The position numbers were made by a program, and so were the translations under genes. From positions 151,657 to 215,656 of the IMG/VR virus record IMGVR_UViG_3300046694_000296: DNA of 64,000 bases, one strand, 5' to 3'. Of this stretch, positions 51,652-58,900 are shown piece by piece; the first letter of the stretch is position 1, and each line of letters begins with the position of its first letter. The notes beneath the pieces are model-generated. The model worked only from the letters and a program-made list of their open reading frames with translations, ran no database searches and was not told where the DNA came from.

Positions 51652-53370
51652 TCATGCTGCCTTCCTGAAAACGGAGTAGTCGAAGTCCTGCACGATGTTC
51701 TCGGCAAAGCCCGGGGTGTTCGCGATGATCGACATACGCTCCTTCTGGTGGTCGCGCAGGGTCGAGTTGACCGCTTCCTGATAGTCCACCACGAACGCGA
51801 TGTTCGGCCCGTTCTTCTTCTTGCGCAGCCCGCGCCCGATGCGCTGGCGGGTCTGCACCTCGGCCTTGCCCGCGCCAGCGAGCACGATCAGGCCCACGGC
51901 CGGCACATCGACCCCGACGTCCATGATCGAGGTGCCGATCACCGCATCGACCTTGCGGTCGCGCAGCGCGTTAAGCGCCGCCTTGCGCTCGTTCTGGTCG
52001 TTGGCGCCCTTGATGAACGCCACGCGCACGCCCGCTTGCGTGAGCATGTCCGAGAGGATGCGCCCGTGCTCGGTGCGCGACACCAGAATCATGCCCGGCA
52101 GGCCGTGCTGCTTCGCGCGGCTCACCTCGTAGACGATCGAGCGGTTGCGCTCCTCGTTGTGCACGACGCCGATCTCGTAGCACTTGGGCCACGGGGTCGA
52201 GCGAAAGAGCCGGTGCGTGACCATCTTGCCCCGGACCTCTTCCTGATAGAACGGGGCGGCTGTGCGCAGCTGCACGAACTTGAAGTAGGGCTTGGCGAGC
52301 ACGCCGAGGTCGATCAGTTGCTTCTCGGTGACGGTGATGGCCACAGGCCCGGAGCATGCCTCGAGGCGCAGGTTGTCCTCGGGCGAGTCCTTCATGAAGG
52401 GAGTGGCGGTCAGCGCGAGGCGGTAATGGGCGTTCACGCAGTGCCGCATGATCTCGTAGAAGCCGCTGCCCGACGCCTCGTGCGCTTCTTCGAGGATCAC
52501 GAACTCGACGGAGGCCAGGAACTTGATCATTTCCTCGCGCTTCCTGTTGTGTTCCGTGACCTTCGCCTGGATCTCGGCCACCACGTGTGCGTCGGGCGTG
52601 CGCTTCGCCTCGAGCTGCTGGCGCAGCGCGGTTGTCGCATCGGCGACCTGTGTCACTGGTAGCTTCTGCTTTTTCAGCTTCGCCTGCAGCTTCTCGACCT
52701 CGCGGTCTTCGGCGGCGTTGCGGTTCTTGATGAAGGCGAGCAATTCGCCCTCGTCGGTCCAGAGTTCAATCGCGGCGCTGATGGTCTGCACCATCCCGAG
52801 CGTGAACTGACGCGAAAAGTCCCGCTGGCTGTCGCCCACGACGCCCACGCGCTCGCCAAGGTTCTCGGTGACCGCATCGCCCATCTGATACATGAGGATG
52901 CCCCGCGTGGTTAGAAAAAGCGTCTTGCGGCCGATGCGCTTGTAGCAGATCCGGGCAATGCGCGACTTGCCGCCGCCGGTTGCCACGCGCGCGATGATGG
53001 CGCGGTGCTTGACCAGCTTGTCGGCCACCTCGGGCTGATAGTTGTAGGCCGGGTCGTAGCCGAACTCGTCGACCACCGGGCGCTCCGGGCCGAGTGGGGC
53101 GGGTGCGGGCTTCCTCACGAGATGGACCTTGTAGCCGGCCTTCAGGAGCGCCGCGTAGACCTTGTAGGTGAAGCCCGCCGGGAAGGTGTCATTGGCGAAG
53201 TCGTAGAAGCTCGATGAGCCGTCCCACGACGTTCCCTTGAATGCCTGCGTGTAGCTCGCGCCATCGACGAGGTAGGAGAGCTTCTCGCGCACGAGCAGCT
53301 TCGCCTCGCGCGACGCGCCGAGCAATTTTGCGTTCACCGCACCGGCGGCGAGAGTCAGTCCAGGTGTCAT
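51652..53370 (-). CDS. superfamily 2 helicase (UvsW/XPB-like)
   Basis: ATGGGKS, LEEAH (DEAH variant), LTATP, DVGVDVP, QRIGRGLR. Confidence 0.9.
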   Translation of the reverse strand: MTPGLTLAAGAVNAKLLGASREAKLLVREKLSYLVDGASYTQAFKGTSWDGSSSFYDFANDTFPAGFTYKVYAALLKAGYKVHLVRKPAPAPLGPERPVVDEFGYDPAYNYQPEVADKLVKHRAIIARVATGGGKSRIARICYKRIGRKTLFLTTRGILMYQMGDAVTENLGERVGVVGDSQRDFSRQFTLGMVQTISAAIELWTDEGELLAFIKNRNAAEDREVEKLQAKLKKQKLPVTQVADATTALRQQLEAKRTPDAHVVAEIQAKVTEHNRKREEMIKFLASVEFVILEEAHEASGSGFYEIMRHCVNAHYRLALTATPFMKDSPEDNLRLEACSGPVAITVTEKQLIDLGVLAKPYFKFVQLRTAAPFYQEEVRGKMVTHRLFRSTPWPKCYEIGVVHNEERNRSIVYEVSRAKQHGLPGMILVSRTEHGRILSDMLTQAGVRVAFIKGANDQNERKAALNALRDRKVDAVIGTSIMDVGVDVPAVGLIVLAGAGKAEVQTRQRIGRGLRKKKNGPNIAFVVDYQEAVNSTLRDHQKERMSIIANTPGFAENIVQDFDYSVFRKAA

Positions 53371-53371
53371 T

Positions 53372-54019
53372 TCAATAAACCGTGTGTTTGCGGATCGGGG
53401 TGTTGATCGCTTTTTCGTGGGACCAGCCTTTCTTGAGCCGGTAGCGAAGGGCCTGTGTCGAGCATCCGATCTCCCGCGCCCATGCTTCCATAGGCTGCGT
53501 GCGCCCGTTCGCGGTCAGCAGAACCGTTGTGCTCATGTTCGCGCCCTGTTCTTGGCGCGTCGCCCATCGACAGTTGGAGGGTTCGTAGTTGCCATCGACC
53601 TCGTTTCGTTCGAGTGTGGTGCCGCGCGAACGCGGCCCCATGTCGGCATAGAAGTTCTCGAACGTCTTCCACCGCTCGCAGACTGTGATGCCGCGGCCGC
53701 CGTATCGCTCGTAGCCATTGCAGCGGGGATCACCGGTGCGATAGAGCATCGCCTGCCACGTCCGGTATTCAGGCGTGTCGGCCATACCGTGCGTGCGCCG
53801 ACAGTCGCCGCTCTTTGCAACCTCAAGCTGCAGGCAGCCGCACGACCGCACCTTGCCGCGCTTCAAATCCGCGCTCGCGGCGGTGTGCTCCTTCCCGCAA
53901 TCGCACACGCACATCCATTTTTCGCTGCCCGCATACGACAGCGCGCGCAGGCGCCCGAACTGTTTATTCGTCAGGTCTTGGGGCTTAGGCCCGCTTTTCT
54001 TCTTGCCGGTCGATTCCAT
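53372..54019 (-). CDS. free-standing HNH-like endonuclease
   Basis: DLTNKQFGRL, W.C.CDCG, SCGC, YGGRGITVCERW..FENFYADMG, LER..VDGNYEPSNCRWAT..EQ.AN. Confidence 0.85.
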   Translation of the reverse strand: MESTGKKKSGPKPQDLTNKQFGRLRALSYAGSEKWMCVCDCGKEHTAASADLKRGKVRSCGCLQLEVAKSGDCRRTHGMADTPEYRTWQAMLYRTGDPRCNGYERYGGRGITVCERWKTFENFYADMGPRSRGTTLERNEVDGNYEPSNCRWATRQEQGANMSTTVLLTANGRTQPMEAWAREIGCSTQALRYRLKKGWSHEKAINTPIRKHTVY

Positions 54020-54059
54020 GTGTGGAAAAATGAGTAACGCGTGACTTACCTTATACCAG

Positions 54060-54707
54060 ATGACAACTACTCCGACAGCTCTCCGTGTTTCCGTTGACGC
54101 GCTTCGTGCAAATCCGTGGAACACCAACAGCCTCACACCCGAGAACGAAGCGAAGCTCGATGCTTCCATCGTGCGCTTCGGCGTCTACAAGCCGATCGTC
54201 GTGCGCCCGCACCCGGACGGCGAGGGCTACGAAATTCTGGGCGGTCAGCATCGGTGGGAGGCAGCGCGCCGCGCGGGCCACGCTGATGTGCTGATCGTCA
54301 ACGTCGGCCCCGTGTCTGATCTGACGGCCAAAGAGATTGGCCTCGTCGACAACGGCCGCTACGGCGAAGACGACACGCTGGCGCTCTCGCGCTTGCTCAA
54401 GGAGATGGGCGTCGAGGACATCGGCACCTTCCTTCCCTACACCGACGGCGAGCTGGAAAACATTCTCGCTGCTTCAAGTATAGATCTCGACGACCTAGAC
54501 AAGCTGGATGAGGCCGAAATGCCTGATCTGTCGGGTCCGGGCGTGGGCGCCACGCATCAGGTGATGCGCTTCAAGGTGCCTGTCGAGGATGTCGCGTGGG
54601 TCACGAGCGCCATCGAGCGCCGCCAGCGCGAGGCCGGTTTCACCACCGAAGACTCCATGACGAACGCCGGCATGGCCTTCGTCGATCTGATGAAGGCATA
54701 CAAATGA
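54060..54707 (+). CDS. ParB/Srx N-terminal-domain protein
   Basis: LRANPWNTN, GVYKPIVVRP, EILGGQHRWEAA; no obvious HTH. Confidence 0.8.
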   Translation: MTTTPTALRVSVDALRANPWNTNSLTPENEAKLDASIVRFGVYKPIVVRPHPDGEGYEILGGQHRWEAARRAGHADVLIVNVGPVSDLTAKEIGLVDNGRYGEDDTLALSRLLKEMGVEDIGTFLPYTDGELENILAASSIDLDDLDKLDEAEMPDLSGPGVGATHQVMRFKVPVEDVAWVTSAIERRQREAGFTTEDSMTNAGMAFVDLMKAYK

Positions 54708-55168
54708 TCCGCTACATCGGCACCAAGGTCATTCTCGCGCGCCCCATGACGCGCGGCGCATACAACGACTATCGAGGCTGGACGATTCCCGCCAACGAAG
54801 ACCCGCTTGAAGAAGGCTATCTCGTCGAATACACGGACGGCGGTGCGTCGAACCACGTCAACCACGCGGGCTATGTCTCCTGGAGCCCCAAGGACGTGTT
54901 CGAGGCAGCCTACCGACCCACCGTCGGCATGAGCTTCGGTATGGCTATCGAGGCGATGAAGATAGGCATGCGCGTCGCACGCGTGGGCTGGAACGGCAAG
55001 GGCATGTTCCTTGAGCTTTTCAGCCCATCCGGTGCCGGCCTCATTCTCCAATCGGGCGAGAGCATCTCCGAGCTTCCGTGGATCGGTATGAAGACCGTCG
55101 AGGGCAAGTTCGTGCCTTGGTTCGCATCGCAGGCTGACATGCTCTCGGACGACTGGATCACGGTATGA
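54704..55168 (+). CDS. DUF2829/Tad2-like domain with an extra N-terminal domain
   Basis: C-half MSFGMAIEAMKIGMRVARVGWNGKGMFL...VPWFASQADMLSDDW; N-half YIGTK...GYLVEY...YVSWSPKDVFEAAY. Confidence 0.75.
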   Translation: MIRYIGTKVILARPMTRGAYNDYRGWTIPANEDPLEEGYLVEYTDGGASNHVNHAGYVSWSPKDVFEAAYRPTVGMSFGMAIEAMKIGMRVARVGWNGKGMFLELFSPSGAGLILQSGESISELPWIGMKTVEGKFVPWFASQADMLSDDWITV

Positions 55169-55434
55169 GCAAGCCATACGGTTTCGCCGCTATCCCGCGC
55201 GCCGAGTTTCTCTACCCGGAGTGCGAGTCCTGCTACTTCCACAACCTCGAGCCTGCCATCTGCGAGAACTGCGACAACGGCGATCAATACGAGCCGGATG
55301 ACGACCTCGAAGACAAGCTCTCCGAGCGCAAGGCCGCCATCGTGCGGTTCTTCCGCAAGATCAGAACACCCCTGCCGGCCGAGTTCCTGCAAGACGAACT
55401 GCCGGTGCCCGAAAAGGAGCTCGAAGCAGCATGA
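55165..55434 (+). CDS. small Cys-rich protein
   Basis: CESC...CENC; coupled on both sides. Confidence 0.6.
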   Translation: MSKPYGFAAIPRAEFLYPECESCYFHNLEPAICENCDNGDQYEPDDDLEDKLSERKAAIVRFFRKIRTPLPAEFLQDELPVPEKELEAA

Positions 55435-56075
55435 GCCAAGTCACCCGAACCAATGAAGTGCGTGCGGTCGCCGACCTCGTGCCGTATGCGAAGAACGTCA
55501 AGAAGCACGACGACGCGCAGGTCGCCAAGATCATCGAGTCGGTCCAGCAATTCGGCTGGACGCAGCCCATCGTGATCGACGAAGCCAACGTCATCATCGC
55601 CGGCCACGGCCGGCGCCTGGCGGCCACCAAGCTCGGCATGAAGCAGGTGCCGGTGCTCGTGCTGCGCGGCCTGACCGATGAGCAGAAGCGCGCGCTGCGC
55701 CTGGCCGACAACCGCACGAACGAGGGCGGCATCGACACGCTCATGTTCCGCGAGGAGATGCTTGGCATCGAGGATCTGCTCACCGGCATCTTCGACACGA
55801 AGGAGCTCGAGTTCTCGGCGGCCGATCTGGGCACGCTCAACGAGGCTGCCTTCGTGCCCGACGTCGCGGAAGCGGTCGAGATGCAGGAGATGGAAGCGCA
55901 CGCGAAGGCCGATGAAGTCGTTGCGCGCCGCGTGCCGCTCTCCAAGGCATTCGGCTTCAAGGACGTGGCCGGCGCGCACGAGATCCACATCTCGCGCTTC
56001 ATGGCGCGTGCGCAGGCCGAAACCGGGTTGACGGGCGCCGACGCGCTCGCGGCTTTCCTCGAAACCCTCGCGTAA
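55431..56075 (+). CDS. ParB/Srx N-terminal-domain protein (type often fused to phage DNA-modifying enzymes)
   Basis: LVPYAKNVKKH...QFGWTQPIVID..IIAGHGR..AA..LG...LRLADN. Confidence 0.85.
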   Translation: MSQVTRTNEVRAVADLVPYAKNVKKHDDAQVAKIIESVQQFGWTQPIVIDEANVIIAGHGRRLAATKLGMKQVPVLVLRGLTDEQKRALRLADNRTNEGGIDTLMFREEMLGIEDLLTGIFDTKELEFSAADLGTLNEAAFVPDVAEAVEMQEMEAHAKADEVVARRVPLSKAFGFKDVAGAHEIHISRFMARAQAETGLTGADALAAFLETLA

Positions 56076-56089
56076 GTAACCCGTAACTC

Positions 56090-56806
56090 ATGACCACATA
56101 CACCATCGACAAGCGCTTCCACACGCGCGTCGCGCGCAGCCAGCGCGTCGTGGAAGTCGCTGAAGCGTTCGGCCTTGGGCTGGACGACAAGGAATTCGTG
56201 ATCTTCGACCAGCTGAAGCTGGACGTCGCGCAAGGCGACGTGATCTACATCACCGGCCAGTCCGGCAGCGGCAAGTCGCTGCTCCTGCGCGAGCTGTCCG
56301 CGCAGATGGCCGCCGAAGGCCAGAAGGTCGCGAACCTCGATGAGGTGGCGATCGACCCGGATGCGCCGCTCATCGACCAGATCGGCACCAGCACGAACGA
56401 TGCGATCCGGCTGCTCTCGATTGCCGGCCTGAACGACGCGTATCTCTTCATCCGCAAGCCCGGCGAGCTCTCCGACGGCCAGCGCTACCGCTTCAAGCTC
56501 GCCAAAGCCATCGAGTCGCAGGCCGACGTCTGGGTCGCTGACGAGTTCATGGCGGTGCTCGACCGGACCGCGGCCAAGGTGATCGCGTATGCCGTGCAGA
56601 AGACCGCGCGCAAGGTCAACGCGACCGTGATCGTTGCGACTACCCACCTCGACCTCGTGGAAGACCTGCAGCCGTCGCTCTACATCGAAAAAAGGTATCG
56701 AGAAAAGCTGCGCATCGAAGCATTCACCGACCTCAACGCGGCGGCCGAAGGCTCGAAGACCCTCACGCGCGATGAAGCCTACGACCTCATGAAAAGGATG
56801 GCCTGA
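56090..56806 (+). CDS. stand-alone ABC ATPase
   Basis: GQSGSGKS, LSDGQRYR, VADEF, ATTH; no permease nearby. Confidence 0.85.
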   Translation: MTTYTIDKRFHTRVARSQRVVEVAEAFGLGLDDKEFVIFDQLKLDVAQGDVIYITGQSGSGKSLLLRELSAQMAAEGQKVANLDEVAIDPDAPLIDQIGTSTNDAIRLLSIAGLNDAYLFIRKPGELSDGQRYRFKLAKAIESQADVWVADEFMAVLDRTAAKVIAYAVQKTARKVNATVIVATTHLDLVEDLQPSLYIEKRYREKLRIEAFTDLNAAAEGSKTLTRDEAYDLMKRMA

Positions 56807-57135
56807 TGAACCCGAAGTATGAAGCGGCGCTCGAAGCGTCGAAGACCCGCCCGCAAGTCGTGATTTTCACGGCAGCCTGGTGCGGCCCGTGCAAGCTGCT
56901 CAAGCCCGCGCTGCAGGCGCTCAAGGCCGACTACGGCTTTGACTATCACGAGTTCGACGCAGCGGAGTTCGAGCAGGCGGAGTTGCTGACGCTCGGCGTG
57001 CGCAACGTGCCGAACGTGCGCGTGCTCCTGAACACCGTCGTGAAGGCACAGTTCGTCGGCGCGCGCACGAAGGCGCAGGTCGAGGACTGGCTCACGGAGC
57101 TGGGCGTCATCTCGCGCGGACTGAGCTTCGAATGA
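56806..57135 (+). CDS. thioredoxin
   Basis: FTAAWCGPCK, GVRNVP. Confidence 0.9.
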   Translation: MNPKYEAALEASKTRPQVVIFTAAWCGPCKLLKPALQALKADYGFDYHEFDAAEFEQAELLTLGVRNVPNVRVLLNTVVKAQFVGARTKAQVEDWLTELGVISRGLSFE

Positions 57136-58109
57136 GCGCGCCGGCGACCGCGGTGCCGATCGAGTTCGACACCGACATCGACAACCTCACACTCGGCTGG
57201 CGCGATCCGGCGGCCGGCACGCGGCCGCTCTCGCTCATGAAGCACATGTATGTCGAGCGCGGCACGCTGGAAGACTGGCAACTGCTGCACGAGCTCCACT
57301 ACAAGGCGAGCAACAACGGCATCGGCCCGCGCTACGTGCGTCTGGTGATCGACGACGGCGTGGAGCCGGCGCTCACCATCGGCGTGATGGTGTTCACGGT
57401 GCCCAAGCCCCTGGACTCGGGCCGCAATCAGGTGTTTCCGCACCTGCGGCCGAACCAGAACGGGCGCGACAACCGGCTCATCAACGTGCAGCGCATGGCG
57501 TGGATCAACAAGAACCTGATCCTGTCCTCGCGCACGGTGCTCGACACGATGTATCGCGGCGGCGGCATCGCCTACCGCTTCAAGAACATCGGCTACCGGC
57601 TGATGGGCTTCCGCTATGTCGAGAGCCGCAGCTCGATGAGCCGCTACAACCCGTTCTCCATCAAGGCGGGCATGCGCTTCGTGAAGCCGAAGTCGGCGCC
57701 GGCGTTCGAGACGGGCCTCGCGTTTTTCGCGCGGCACTTCAAGAGCCCGGCCTACGACTACGTGGCGATCAAGGCCGAGATCGAGGCGATGCCCGACTAC
57801 CTGCGCGAGCACACGCTCAAGGAGCTGCGCGCCTTCTACTACCGCAACAGCTCGATGGAAAAGTCGGGCGACAACCGGTTGAACGGCACCTCCCGCGTCG
57901 AGCAGATGGAGCTCGGCTACCTGCTCAAGCAGACCCAGCAGCTCGTGTTCGGCGCGACCGTCTATGCCGCGTGGGCGAACCCTGACTGGGATCCAACGAC
58001 GCAGGCCATGCGCGCGCTGCCCGCGCGTATCCCGCTTTCCGCATTCGACAACCAAGCGGTCGATGAACCGCTGCGACTGGACCTTCTGGAGACACACCAT
58101 GACGCTTAA
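57132..58109 (+). CDS. GNAT-fold acyltransferase (ABC-ATPase-associated, possibly DNA-modifying)
   Basis: LHY, SRTVLDTMYRGGGIA (acyl-CoA motif A), SMSRYNPF..KAGM. Confidence 0.65.
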   Translation: MSAPATAVPIEFDTDIDNLTLGWRDPAAGTRPLSLMKHMYVERGTLEDWQLLHELHYKASNNGIGPRYVRLVIDDGVEPALTIGVMVFTVPKPLDSGRNQVFPHLRPNQNGRDNRLINVQRMAWINKNLILSSRTVLDTMYRGGGIAYRFKNIGYRLMGFRYVESRSSMSRYNPFSIKAGMRFVKPKSAPAFETGLAFFARHFKSPAYDYVAIKAEIEAMPDYLREHTLKELRAFYYRNSSMEKSGDNRLNGTSRVEQMELGYLLKQTQQLVFGATVYAAWANPDWDPTTQAMRALPARIPLSAFDNQAVDEPLRLDLLETHHDA

Positions 58110-58322
58110 AACGACTGCCAAGACGCTGTGCGTAGTGGGCACCAAGGGCGCGCTCTCGCCCTGGACGATGGAAACGGTCGACGACGTGGCCGACGTGCGC
58201 GGCAAGGCGTATGACTTCGTGATCTGGGCGCGCACCCCCTCGAAAGAGGAATACGAGGCCGTGGCCGCGACGCTGAAGGGCTCGGAGTATGGCGACCACT
58301 TCTGGACCTGCCGGCGGCCGCG

Positions 58323-58760
58323 ATGAACCTCACGATCAAGCAGATCGAGATCATGAAAGTGGTGGCCGCAGCCACCGCTGCCGAGCCGGTCGATCTGGAT
58401 CAGCTGCTCGAACGCCTGCCCTACGCGACCACCAAGGAGAGCCTGCAGTTCTCCTTGCGTGCGATCGAGCGGCACGGGCTGATCGACCGCAGCCACGCCG
58501 AGCACCGCCGCGGGCGTCTGCGGCGGCTCGTCAAGCCTACGGATATGGGGCGCGCGGTGATTGGCGGAACCGGCAGGCCGGCGCCCGGGCCGGGCTCTTC
58601 GATCGGAACGAAGTCGGACGAACCGCAGTTTGTGGCGAGCTCCGATCCGCGACTCATGGAAGAAGTAACGCAGGACTTACCGGAGCCGGAGCTTCTTTCT
58701 CTCCCGGAGCTGTCTCTTCCCGAGCCGGTGCCTTTCCTCGAAGAAGAGTTTATTGATTAA
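58323..58760 (+). CDS. winged-helix DNA-binding protein with acidic tail
   Basis: LTIKQIEIM...LDQLLERL..TKESLQFSLRAIERHGLI...R.LVKPT..G. Confidence 0.7.
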   Translation: MNLTIKQIEIMKVVAAATAAEPVDLDQLLERLPYATTKESLQFSLRAIERHGLIDRSHAEHRRGRLRRLVKPTDMGRAVIGGTGRPAPGPGSSIGTKSDEPQFVASSDPRLMEEVTQDLPEPELLSLPELSLPEPVPFLEEEFID

Positions 58761-58900
58761 AAAGTAAGCATTTTTTGTAGTTTTTACCACTTGTCACTTT
58801 TTCGGTTTCCCTCTTATATATAACCTTCTTTTTTATACATAGTAAAAAACTACATTCTAAAAACTATGGGAAACCCCAAAAAGTGACAAGTAAGTAAGGA
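58761..58900. repeat. AT-rich region with two interleaved inverted repeats
   Basis: 58789-58811 pairs with 58868-58891; 58776-58787 pairs with 58842-58854. Confidence 0.8.

What the first reader, a model, noticed from the sequence alone, without database searches (positions are those of the whole stretch)
54704..55168. Tad2-like immune-signal sponge fused to a second small domain, inserted in the ParB cluster
The C-half matches DUF2829/Tad2 signatures (FG.A.EA.K.G..VAR.GWNGKGMF, W..SQ.D.L..DW). Established: Tad2 sequesters Thoeris gcADPR and some cyclic dinucleotides, and phage sponges are often fused to one another. Inference: the N-terminal YIGTK...SWSPKDVFE domain may be an additional anti-defence or sponge module.
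Basis: partly seen in the sequence, partly recalled or inferred. Interest (0 to 1): 0.6.

Follow-up and report, generated by a model that had tools for sequence, protein, structure and literature searches.

The report
Tad2 sponge with N4-gp49-type extra domain
This jumbo-phage gene encodes a common two-domain counter-defence protein (the same layout as gp49 of model phage N4): a Tad2 domain predicted to soak up bacterial alarm molecules, joined to a widespread, unnamed small barrel domain whose own job is still unknown.

Summary
Window 54704-55168 (+) is a 154-aa gene, translationally coupled to its neighbours. Residues 76-154 are a clear Tad2/DUF2829 domain (Pfam 1.9e-21; solved Tad2 structures Z 10.6). 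The main gcADPR-pocket residues are kept. The loop that binds cyclic dinucleotides in HgmTad2 is short.

Residues 1-72 are a separate SH3/Tudor-like barrel with no Pfam family and no solved relative found. It is not rare: 3,273 cluster representatives carry it, and the whole protein is phrog_872, the layout of phage N4 gp49 (47% identical). Among the 149 best representatives it is fused to Tad2 (49), Sequestin (41), Acb4 (14) or Acb2/Tad1 (3). It also occurs with Lockin, with RyR-Tad, and alone.

A 2026 preprint solved a divergent homologue, CB1 gp68. There the domain is a strand-swapped dimer, and alone it had no anti-type-I-Thoeris activity. My dimer model passed its controls (0.51 vs 0.00) with the same strand exchange. 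Twelve invariant polar or aromatic residues lie outside that interface, so a second binding function is plausible but unshown.

Verdict: an ordinary member of a known anti-defence family, with an uncharacterised, widely reused partner domain. Synteny supports insertion between the two ParB genes.

The parts
54704..55168 (+). Whole gene, 154 aa plus stop: N4-gp49-type two-domain protein (phrog_872)
   Evidence: ORF and translation. phrog_872 E 1.1e-54 over residues 1-154. 47% identity to N4 gp49 over both domains.
54704..54919 (+). N-terminal domain, aa 1-72: SH3/Tudor-like small barrel with no Pfam family, predicted strand-swapped homodimer
   Evidence: No Pfam hit. Best solved-structure matches are weak: Z 5.1 to DUF1653 3be3 and 4.6-4.7 to CarD/Mfd. 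3,273 cluster representatives at E<=1e-3. Homologous to the CB1 gp68 N-domain: hhalign probability 97%, E 1.1e-10. Dimer model ipSAE 0.51 against a best control of 0.00.
54929..55165 (+). Tad2-like (DUF2829) domain, aa 76-154: predicted gcADPR-type signal sponge
   Evidence: PF11195 E 1.9e-21. Solved Tad2 structures match: Foldseek E 7.6e-07, VIA Z 10.6 with rmsd 2.8 over 78-79 residues. Pocket residues W96, N97, T131, W139, S142 and D145 align with SPO1 W25, N26, T65, W73, S76 and D79.
54692..54696 (+). GAAGG, a Shine-Dalgarno-like motif 7 nt before the ATG
   Evidence: Read directly from the sequence.
54060..54707 (+). Upstream ParB-like gene (phrog_723); its stop overlaps the start of the Tad2 gene
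   Evidence: PF02195 E 2.6e-12 and phrog_723 E 1.8e-56.
55165..55434 (+). Small CxxC...CxxC ORF (89 aa). In Rhizobium phage RHph_Y2_11 its counterpart directly follows the first ParB.
   Evidence: Aligned with L011 and RHph_Y2_11 counterparts. Gene orders.
55431..56075 (+). Second ParB-like gene (phrog_930)
   Evidence: PF02195 E 5.5e-07 and phrog_930 E 2.9e-67.

Best explanation
The gene encodes a phage counter-defence protein of the N4-gp49 type. It is co-translated with the ParB/ABC-ATPase operon of a 215.7-kb phage.

The C-terminal Tad2 domain is inferred, by homology, to form the usual homotetramer. I predict that it sequesters TIR-made ADP-ribose signals (1''-3'/1''-2' gcADPR and possibly related molecules) in pockets between protomers, so that Thoeris-type effectors are never switched on. 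It lacks the long insertion that lets HgmTad2 and SptTad2 also bind cyclic dinucleotides.

The N-terminal 72 residues are an autonomous small beta-barrel. It pairs with a second copy by exchanging its first strand, which would put two such dimers on one Tad2 tetramer. I think it most likely (about 0.55) also uses its invariant surface outside the dimer interface (R17, Y20, N21, R24, W26, E32, D45, N50, Y57, S59, W60, S61) to bind something of its own: another immune signal or a host protein. The alternative is that it is mere glue.

Shown here: domain identities, pocket-residue conservation, the breadth of fusions, the predicted dimer, and synteny. Inferred: ligand binding, tetramer formation, and any activity of the N-domain.
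For: Tad2 identity: Pfam 1.9e-21; matches to solved Tad2 sequences; fold matches at Z 10.6. SPO1 pocket residues W25/N26/W73/D79/S76/T65 are kept as W96/N97/W139/D145/S142/T131 (alignment with residue roles; the HgmTad2 equivalents W21/N22/S90/D93 are).

N-domain as an autonomous module:
- 3,273 representatives carry it.
- Among the top 149, 49 also carry Tad2, 41 Sequestin, 14 Acb4 and 3 the Acb2/Tad1 hairpin, in every domain order and in triple fusions.
- Lockin and many Sequestin fusions appear in published tables. RyR-Tad fusions also exist.
- Genuine stand-alone 73-aa genes occur in T7-like contigs.
- 29 positions are at least 90% conserved whatever the partner.

Dimer: ipSAE 0.51 (runs 0.45, 0.51, 0.51), best of 3 controls 0.00, contact agreement at least 97%, partner pLDDT at least 84. 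This mark was reached by 20 of 30 solved homodimers and 1 of 23 solved single chains. Strand 9-13 of one copy pairs with 1-5 of the other. This matches the beta1-swapped dimer in the RyR Tad crystal structure.

Context: N4 gp49 sits next to Acb4 (gp48) in the N4-like anti-signalling hotspot.
Against: Nothing here measures binding.
- Tad2 domain: T78 of SPO1 (an adenine hydrogen bond) is A144 here, D67 is E133 and H71 is V137. Affinity or specificity may therefore differ.
- The structure-guided sponge screen of Tal et al. did not report this domain as a sponge family, although fusions carrying it are in their tables.
- The domain is acidic overall, and I could not inspect coordinates for a pocket.
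- The host is unknown, so a matching Thoeris system cannot be shown.
- The dimer pass used my own alignment, so its calibration holds only roughly.
Confidence: 0.6

Rival explanations
1. The Tad2 domain is the only active part. The N-terminal barrel is purely structural: a strand-swapped dimerisation clamp that stabilises or cross-links sponge oligomers and has no ligand or target of its own.
For: In RyR Tad the homologous domain contributes to dimerisation by beta1 exchange. Alone it has no anti-Thoeris-I activity, and the C-domain alone suffices. My model gives the same kind of dimer. A dimer is compatible with dimeric, tetrameric and hexameric partners.
Against: Tad2, Acb4 and Sequestin oligomerise on their own. 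The domain exists as a stand-alone 73-aa gene, which a clamp would not need. 22 of its 29 highly conserved positions, twelve of them polar or aromatic, lie outside the predicted interface and are conserved whatever the partner. gp68_N lacks R17, N21, R24, W26 and the DGG..N loop, so its negative result may not transfer.
Confidence: 0.25
2. The protein acts as an AcrIIA7-like anti-CRISPR. The Tad2-fold tetramer binds tracrRNA of a type II CRISPR-Cas system, and the N-terminal domain gates that activity as the helical head domain does in pdAcrIIA7.
For: Sequence and fold matches to AcrIIA7/HgmTad2, 8kbi and 9kzr. Some phage records annotate homologues as anti-CRISPR. A 2026 paper shows tracrRNA binding by head-less AcrIIA7 and auto-inhibition by its 48-residue N-terminal head (PMC13133391).
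Against: The head domain of pdAcrIIA7 is two helices, unrelated to this barrel; the N-domain profile finds no PDB sequence. The gcADPR pocket residues are conserved here, and family-wide only about 1% of Tad2 proteins were predicted to be non-functional for gcADPR binding. Whether the basic groove residues of AcrIIA7 are kept was not tested. The host, and whether it has type II CRISPR, are unknown.
Confidence: 0.05
3. The N-terminal domain is a divergent copy of an already characterised sponge (Acb4, Sequestin, Lockin or TadIV-1), so the protein is simply one of the published double sponges such as Acb4-Tad2.
For: Acb4-Tad2 fusions are common. Pfam calls PF13876 the 'N4 Gp49' family, and N4 gp49 in GenBank is the homologue of this protein.
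Against: Tested and not met. No PF13876 or PF21825 hit at E<=1. PF13876 matches GenBank N4 gp48, not gp49. The Acb4 domain of Ab09 gp59 has an unrelated sequence. Sequestin and TadIV-1 are helical, and Lockin is a larger curved beta protein forming hexamers. The domain co-occurs with Acb4, Sequestin and Lockin in the same polypeptides.
Confidence: 0.03

Closest known systems
Escherichia phage N4 gp49 (GenBank EF056009, 34003-34485) and PHROG family phrog_872
   Same: Identical two-domain layout, N-barrel plus Tad2. 47% identity over 153 aligned residues. phrog_872 matches end to end. Homologues occur in N4-like, Sf6-like, Vibrio, Pseudomonas and Klebsiella phages; 91 phage records cover at least 80% of the protein.
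   Different: Here the gene lies in a ParB/ABC-ATPase module next to the terminase of a 215.7-kb phage, not in the N4 hotspot beside the virion RNA polymerase. I found no experimental work on N4 gp49 itself.
Tad2 sponges with solved structures: SPO1 Tad2 (8SME/8SMF), ModTad2 (9EIB), HgmTad2 = AcrIIA7 (8KBI), SptTad2 (8WJD)
   Same: Same fold and same core pocket residues (W-N of the GWNGK motif, W139, S142, D145). The expected behaviour is a homotetramer that sequesters gcADPR.
   Different: The characterised proteins are single-domain, 88-104 aa; this one carries a 72-residue N-terminal barrel. The insertion between beta2 and the next core strand is about 20 residues, against 24 in SPO1 and 41 in HgmTad2, so the cyclic-dinucleotide pocket of HgmTad2/SptTad2 is not expected. 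T78 of SPO1 is Ala here.
RyR Tad (Pectobacterium phage CB1 gp68), bioRxiv 10.64898/2026.06.04.730250
   Same: Its N-terminal domain is homologous to this N-domain (hhalign 97%, E 1.1e-10, 35% identity). The crystal shows a beta1-swapped dimer, as my model predicts here. The authors also note that the domain is often a separate ORF.
   Different: The C-terminal sponge is a ryanodine-receptor Repeat12-like helical domain, not Tad2. The gp68 N-domain lacks the family's invariant R17, N21, R24, W26 and DGG..N50.
Published double sponges: Acb4-Tad2 (Pasteurella phage Pm86), Acb4-Sequestin (Pseudomonas phage Ab09 gp59), Tad2-Sequestin
   Same: One polypeptide joining small oligomeric anti-signalling domains. 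The N-domain follows the same combinatorial pattern and joins the same partners.
   Different: In those proteins both halves have demonstrated ligands. Here the second half has none known.

Membership tests
Tad2 / DUF2829 (PF11195) signal sponges | Profile match above Pfam's gathering score over the whole domain | tested here: met
   76.8 bits against a cut-off of 25, E 1.9e-21, profile 1-73/73, residues 76-154.
Tad2 / DUF2829 (PF11195) signal sponges | Tad2 fold: N-terminal helix followed by an antiparallel sheet, superposable on solved Tad2 structures | tested here: met
   Model pLDDT 93. Foldseek E 7.6e-07 to 2.6e-04 against 24 Tad2 chains. VIA Z 10.6, rmsd 2.8, 78-79 residues aligned to 9eib and 8kbi.
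Tad2 / DUF2829 (PF11195) signal sponges | gcADPR pocket residues (SPO1 W25, N26, W73, D79, with S76 and T65) | tested here: met
   These align with W96, N97, W139, D145, S142 and T131 (alignment; roles). Three peripheral contacts differ: T78 to A144, D67 to E133, H71 to V137.
Tad2 / DUF2829 (PF11195) signal sponges | Homotetramer with pockets between protomers | not tested
Tetramer formation is inferred from homology only.
Tad2 / DUF2829 (PF11195) signal sponges | Binds and sequesters TIR-derived signals; rescues phage from Thoeris | not testable with these tools
   Needs biochemistry and plaque assays.
Cyclic-dinucleotide-binding Tad2 subgroup (HgmTad2, SptTad2) | Long insertion of 35-41 residues between beta2 and beta5 that forms the CDN pocket | tested here: not met
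   The insertion is about 20 residues (107-126), shorter than the 24 of SPO1 Tad2.
N4 gp49-type two-domain proteins (phrog_872) | Colinear match of both domains | tested here: met
   phrog_872 E 1.1e-54, residues 1-154 against profile 13-171/172. BLASTP to N4 gp49 2e-52, 47% identity.
RyR-Tad-type N-terminal barrel (strand-swapped dimer module) | Sequence-profile homology to the gp68 N-domain | tested here: met
   hhalign probability 97%, E 1.1e-10, 66 columns.
RyR-Tad-type N-terminal barrel (strand-swapped dimer module) | Homodimer by exchange of strand beta1 | tested here: met
   Prediction only. ipSAE 0.51, best of 3 controls 0.00, at least 97% contact agreement, partner pLDDT at least 84. 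The mark was reached by 20 of 30 solved homodimers and 1 of 23 single chains. Residues 9-13 pair with 1-5 of the other copy.
Acb4 (PF13876, 'N4 Gp49/Sf6 gene 66') | Profile match of the N-domain to PF13876 | tested here: not met
   No hit at E<=1. PF13876 matches GenBank N4 gp48 (8.8e-35) and Ab09 gp59 residues 4-79, not gp49. None in the phage genome.
Sequestin (PF21825) | Profile match; helical dimer | tested here: not met
   No hit in this protein or in the genome. The N-domain is mostly beta. Sequestin occurs as a separate domain C-terminal to the N-domain in other proteins.

The most novel reading that the evidence does not exclude
The N-terminal barrel (the 'N4 gp49 N-domain') is itself an uncharacterised family of anti-defence modules. 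It would be a dimeric sponge or inhibitor for a signal or host protein not covered by its partners, for example Pycsar cyclic mononucleotides, cyclic oligoadenylates, or another ADPR derivative. It would have been overlooked because it has no Pfam model, although it is among the most frequent fusion partners of Tad2, Sequestin and Acb4. N4 gp49 and this protein would then be dual inhibitors.
Probability: 0.3. Interest if true: 0.75.

Novelty: new member of a known kind. Interest (0 to 1): 0.45.

Why it matters
For this window, the gene marks the phage as carrying a Thoeris-type counter-defence. It also shows that the ParB/ABC-ATPase module next to the terminase is a place where such genes are dropped in.

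More generally, Sequestin was discovered by asking what is fused to known sponges. That logic applies even more strongly to this N-domain, which joins at least six sponge families, stands alone, and occurs in model phage N4. That earlier fusion search worked from Pfam families, and this domain has no Pfam model. Settling whether it is a clamp or a new inhibitor is a cheap experiment in N4, and it would either add a family to the anti-defence catalogue or explain why sponges so often carry it.

Tried and rejected
- N-domain as Acb4, Sequestin, Lockin or TadIV-1: rejected.
- Solved relative of the N-domain: none. Foldseek PDB gave only Tad2 hits. A profile search of PDB sequences found nothing below E 1. 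The exhaustive structural search gave only generic SH3/Tudor-like matches: Z 5.1 for DUF1653 and 4.6-4.7 for CarD/Mfd. These are too weak to argue for RNA-polymerase binding.
- Published test sets: none of the 84 sponge proteins tested by Hadary et al. carries the SWSP motif of the N-domain, so the two-domain form is untested there.
- Other known sponges in the phage genome (PF21825, PF13876, PF24729, a second PF11195): none. The control genomes did not ring for three of these families, so absence is weak.
- Promoter and terminator scan of 53200-58900: no better than shuffles.
- tRNA and Rfam scans of the window: nothing.
- Tree of N-domains labelled by partner: 28 changes against 33 (27-39) in shuffles. 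Either there is no phylogenetic signal in 72 conserved columns or shuffling is rampant; inconclusive.
- The partner regions without a Pfam hit are mostly singletons by BLAST and were not classified.
The full-length tetramer could therefore not also be tested.
- Longer GTG start at 54596: rejected.

Full report
**The gene.** Window 54704-55168 (+) holds an ATG-to-TGA ORF of 154 codons. Its ATG overlaps the stop of the upstream ParB-like gene (ATGA), and its stop overlaps the ATG of an 89-codon ORF. A GAAGG lies 7 nt upstream. From 54060 to 58109 seven genes follow each other with overlaps or tiny gaps, so the gene is read as part of one operon. Consensus promoter and terminator scans add nothing. 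A longer GTG start at 54596 would overlap ParB and is not supported by homologues.

**The C-terminal half.** Residues 76-154 match Pfam PF11195 (Tad2-like, formerly DUF2829) at E 1.9e-21, 76.8 bits against a cut-off of 25, over the entire profile.
- They match solved Tad2 sequences: ModTad2 at 1.9e-13, SPO1 Tad2 at about 2e-12, HgmTad2/AcrIIA7 at 2e-11 and SptTad2 at 4e-11.
- An AlphaFold2 model built on 60 homologues has mean pLDDT 93 and pTM 0.66.
- Foldseek finds 24 Tad2 chains at E below 1e-3 and nothing else. The exhaustive aligner gives Z 10.6, rmsd 2.8 over 78-79 residues.
- I took residue roles from the SPO1 Tad2-gcADPR structure paper (10.1101/2023.05.01.538930) and from the HgmTad2 paper (10.1101/2023.11.15.567273), and the alignment. 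The pocket residues W25, N26, W73, D79, S76 and T65 correspond to W96, N97, W139, D145, S142 and T131.
- Three peripheral contacts differ: T78 to A144, D67 to E133 and H71 to V137.
- The insertion that forms the cyclic-dinucleotide pocket in HgmTad2 and SptTad2 is 35-41 residues long. Here it is only about 20 residues, shorter than in SPO1 Tad2.
- I therefore expect a gcADPR-type sponge without that second pocket. This is inference; nothing was measured.

**The N-terminal half.** Residues 1-72 fold with high confidence into four strands and two helices.
- No Pfam family matches, either for this protein or for 31 homologues. Four homologues give only a faint Tudor_5 hit.
- A profile of 43 sequences finds no PDB sequence below E 1.
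- Structurally it is a generic SH3/Tudor-like barrel. The best matches are DUF1653 (3be3) at Z 5.1 and CarD/Mfd at 4.6-4.7, which is too weak to carry function.
- It is not Acb4, Sequestin, Lockin or TadIV-1.

**How common it is.** The whole protein matches phrog_872 end to end (E 1.1e-54), and the N-half alone matches the N-termini of three other PHROGs.
- A word search with the full-length protein returns 4,161 protein clusters. Some of these may match through the Tad2 half alone. The best 120 are at least 55% identical over nearly the whole length.
- tblastn finds the full protein in 91 phage records and the N-domain in 143. These include N4-like, Sf6-like, Vibrio, Pseudomonas, Klebsiella and crAss-like phages.
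- One hit is GenBank gp49 of phage N4, which has the same two domains and is 47% identical.
- Pfam's 'N4 Gp49' family (PF13876, now Acb4) actually matches GenBank gp48 next door.
- N4 therefore carries Acb4 and an N-domain-Tad2 gene side by side, next to the virion RNA polymerase. This is the region that a 2026 preprint describes as the anti-signalling hotspot of N4-like phages (10.64898/2026.06.04.730250).

**The N-domain is a reused module.** A profile search of 1.84 billion representatives finds 3,273 proteins at E<=1e-3 and 1,542 at E<=1e-10.
- Of the best 149, Pfam finds Tad2 in 49, Sequestin (PF21825) in 41, Acb4 in 14 and the Acb2/Tad1 hairpin in 3.
- My own domain maps show the N-domain mostly first, but also last or in the middle, and in triple fusions such as Acb4-N-Sequestin or N-Tad2-Sequestin. 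About 50 proteins have partner regions of 47-157 residues with no family. These counts describe only the top-scoring representatives.
- The supplementary tables of Tal et al. (10.1101/2025.07.12.664507) hold about 90 or more Sequestin homologues and two Lockin homologues that carry the N-domain motif (94 occurrences of SWSPK). I found no mention of this domain in my term searches of the paper's text.
- A RyR-domain protein of Yersinia phage TG1 also carries it.
- Genuine stand-alone genes of 73 codons exist, for example between a class II ribonucleotide reductase and a glutaredoxin in T7-like contigs.
- Twenty-nine positions are at least 90% conserved whatever the partner.
- Within the close family both halves are under similar constraint: mean pairwise identity is 66% for the N-domain and 78% for the Tad2 core.

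**What is known experimentally.** The same 2026 preprint characterises gp68 of Pectobacterium phage CB1 ('RyR Tad').
- Its C-terminal ryanodine-receptor-like domain binds gcADPR.
- gp68_N (residues 1-86) had no anti-type-I-Thoeris activity.
- In the crystal the N-domain forms a domain-swapped dimer, with strand beta1 inserted into the other protomer.
- I fetched gp68 and found that its residues 4-69 are homologous to the N-domain here: hhalign probability 97%, E 1.1e-10, 35% identity.
- gp68 lacks several residues that are invariant in the main family (R17, N21, R24, W26 and the DGG..N50 loop), so its negative result may not carry over.

**Dimer test.** Two copies of residues 1-72, with my 43-row alignment, scored ipSAE 0.51 (runs 0.45, 0.51, 0.51). 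The best of three controls scored 0.00. The runs agree in at least 97% of contacts, and the partner's pLDDT is at least 84.
- In the tool's calibration this mark was reached by 20 of 30 proteins solved as pairs of one chain and by 1 of 23 solved as single chains. The counts hold only roughly, because my own alignment was used.
- The interface is residues 1-13, 40, 42-43 and 69-72. Strand 9-13 of one copy pairs with 1-5 of the other, the same exchange as in RyR Tad.
- The model supports binding; it does not show it.
- Of the 29 highly conserved positions, 22 lie outside this interface. Twelve of those are polar or aromatic: R17, Y20, N21, R24, W26, E32, D45, N50, Y57, S59, W60 and S61.
- A pure clamp would not need these residues, would not need to exist as a lone gene, and would be redundant on partners that already oligomerise. 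This is why I favour an additional binding function, at about 0.55. It is inference.

**Genomic setting.** The window is the last 64 kb of a 215,656-bp IMG/VR virus record with direct terminal repeats, rated complete.
- It carries replication and nucleotide-metabolism genes, then helicase, HNH, ParB, this gene, a small CxxC ORF, a second ParB, an ABC-type ATPase, thioredoxin and a phrog_886 protein, then terminase, portal and scaffold.
- A 115.6-kb metagenomic contig whose homologue is 75% identical has the same order, including this gene between the ParBs.
- Rhizobium phage RHph_Y2_11 has ParB, the CxxC ORF and ParB with nothing in between. It carries instead a single-domain 100-aa DUF2829 gene after the ABC ATPase.
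- No other known sponge family was detected in the genome, though three of those searches had silent controls.
- The host is unknown.

**Rivals.**
- A purely structural N-domain: probability 0.25.
- An AcrIIA7-like tracrRNA binder: probability 0.05. The precedent is that an N-terminal head domain gates that activity (PMC13133391), but the head is helical and unrelated to this barrel.
- A disguised known sponge: probability 0.03, tested and not met.

**Verdict.** The gene is an ordinary member of a very large, already annotated family (DUF2829/Tad2; the phrog_872 and N4 gp49 layout). The open and more interesting part is the N-domain. It is a widespread, unnamed, strand-swapping barrel that joins at least six sponge families and also stands alone. 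Its own function has been probed only once, in a divergent member and against one defence system.

Noticed in passing
window 53372-54169 (-): An HNH endonuclease gene (phrog_374, E 1.1e-63) sits between the UvsW-like helicase and the first ParB. The related 115.6-kb contig L011 and Rhizobium phage RHph_Y2_11 have no gene there. It looks like a homing-endonuclease insertion.
   Followed up: partly
window 55165-55434 (+); L011 6470-6661; L010 3710-3892: A small CxxC...CxxC (zinc-ribbon-like) ORF is conserved between the two ParB-like genes in all three phages. It has no Pfam or PHROG family.
   Followed up: partly
window 54060-58109 (+): A conserved operon lies just upstream of the terminase: ParB, (Tad2), CxxC ORF, ParB, ABC-type ATPase (phrog_293), thioredoxin, phrog_886 protein. 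It is shared with Rhizobium phages and metagenomic contigs. Its function is not obvious.
   Followed up: no
L009 (phage N4, EF056009 33632-34485): Naming trap. Pfam PF13876 'N4 Gp49/Sf6 gene 66' (= Acb4) matches GenBank N4 gp48. GenBank gp49 is the N-domain-Tad2 protein. The two anti-signalling genes are adjacent.
   Followed up: yes
proteins P0162-P0309 (representatives): About 50 of the 149 N-domain proteins carry partner regions of 47-157 residues with no Pfam hit, mostly singletons by BLAST. By the fusion logic these are a pool of candidate new anti-signalling domains.
   Followed up: partly
L002-L006 (metagenomic T7-like contigs): The stand-alone 73-aa N-domain gene lies between a class II ribonucleotide reductase and a glutaredoxin, overlapping the latter's start. 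In the window a thioredoxin lies about 1.6 kb downstream of the N-domain gene. This may be coincidence.
   Followed up: no
L010 5598-5900 (Rhizobium phage RHph_Y2_11, MN988547 20987-21289): A single-domain DUF2829/Tad2 gene (100 aa) sits after the ABC ATPase, in the slot where the window has thioredoxin. A 2026 paper (PMC13299392) claims the first Tad2-like domain in a rhizobiophage, but this 2020 record already annotates one.
   Followed up: partly
whole record G000 (215,656 bp); window = 151657-215656: The record is about twice the size of its nearest syntenic relatives (115.6 and 117 kb), yet it holds only one copy of this gene, so it is not a simple two-copy concatemer.
   Followed up: partly
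supplementary tables of 10.1101/2025.07.12.664507: A short form of the N-domain lacks the helix with R17-W26 (YIGTKQILAWEQD...GYVSWSPKDVFE). It is fused to Sequestin in Pseudomonas prophages. The barrel core and the helix insert may therefore have separable roles.
   Followed up: no
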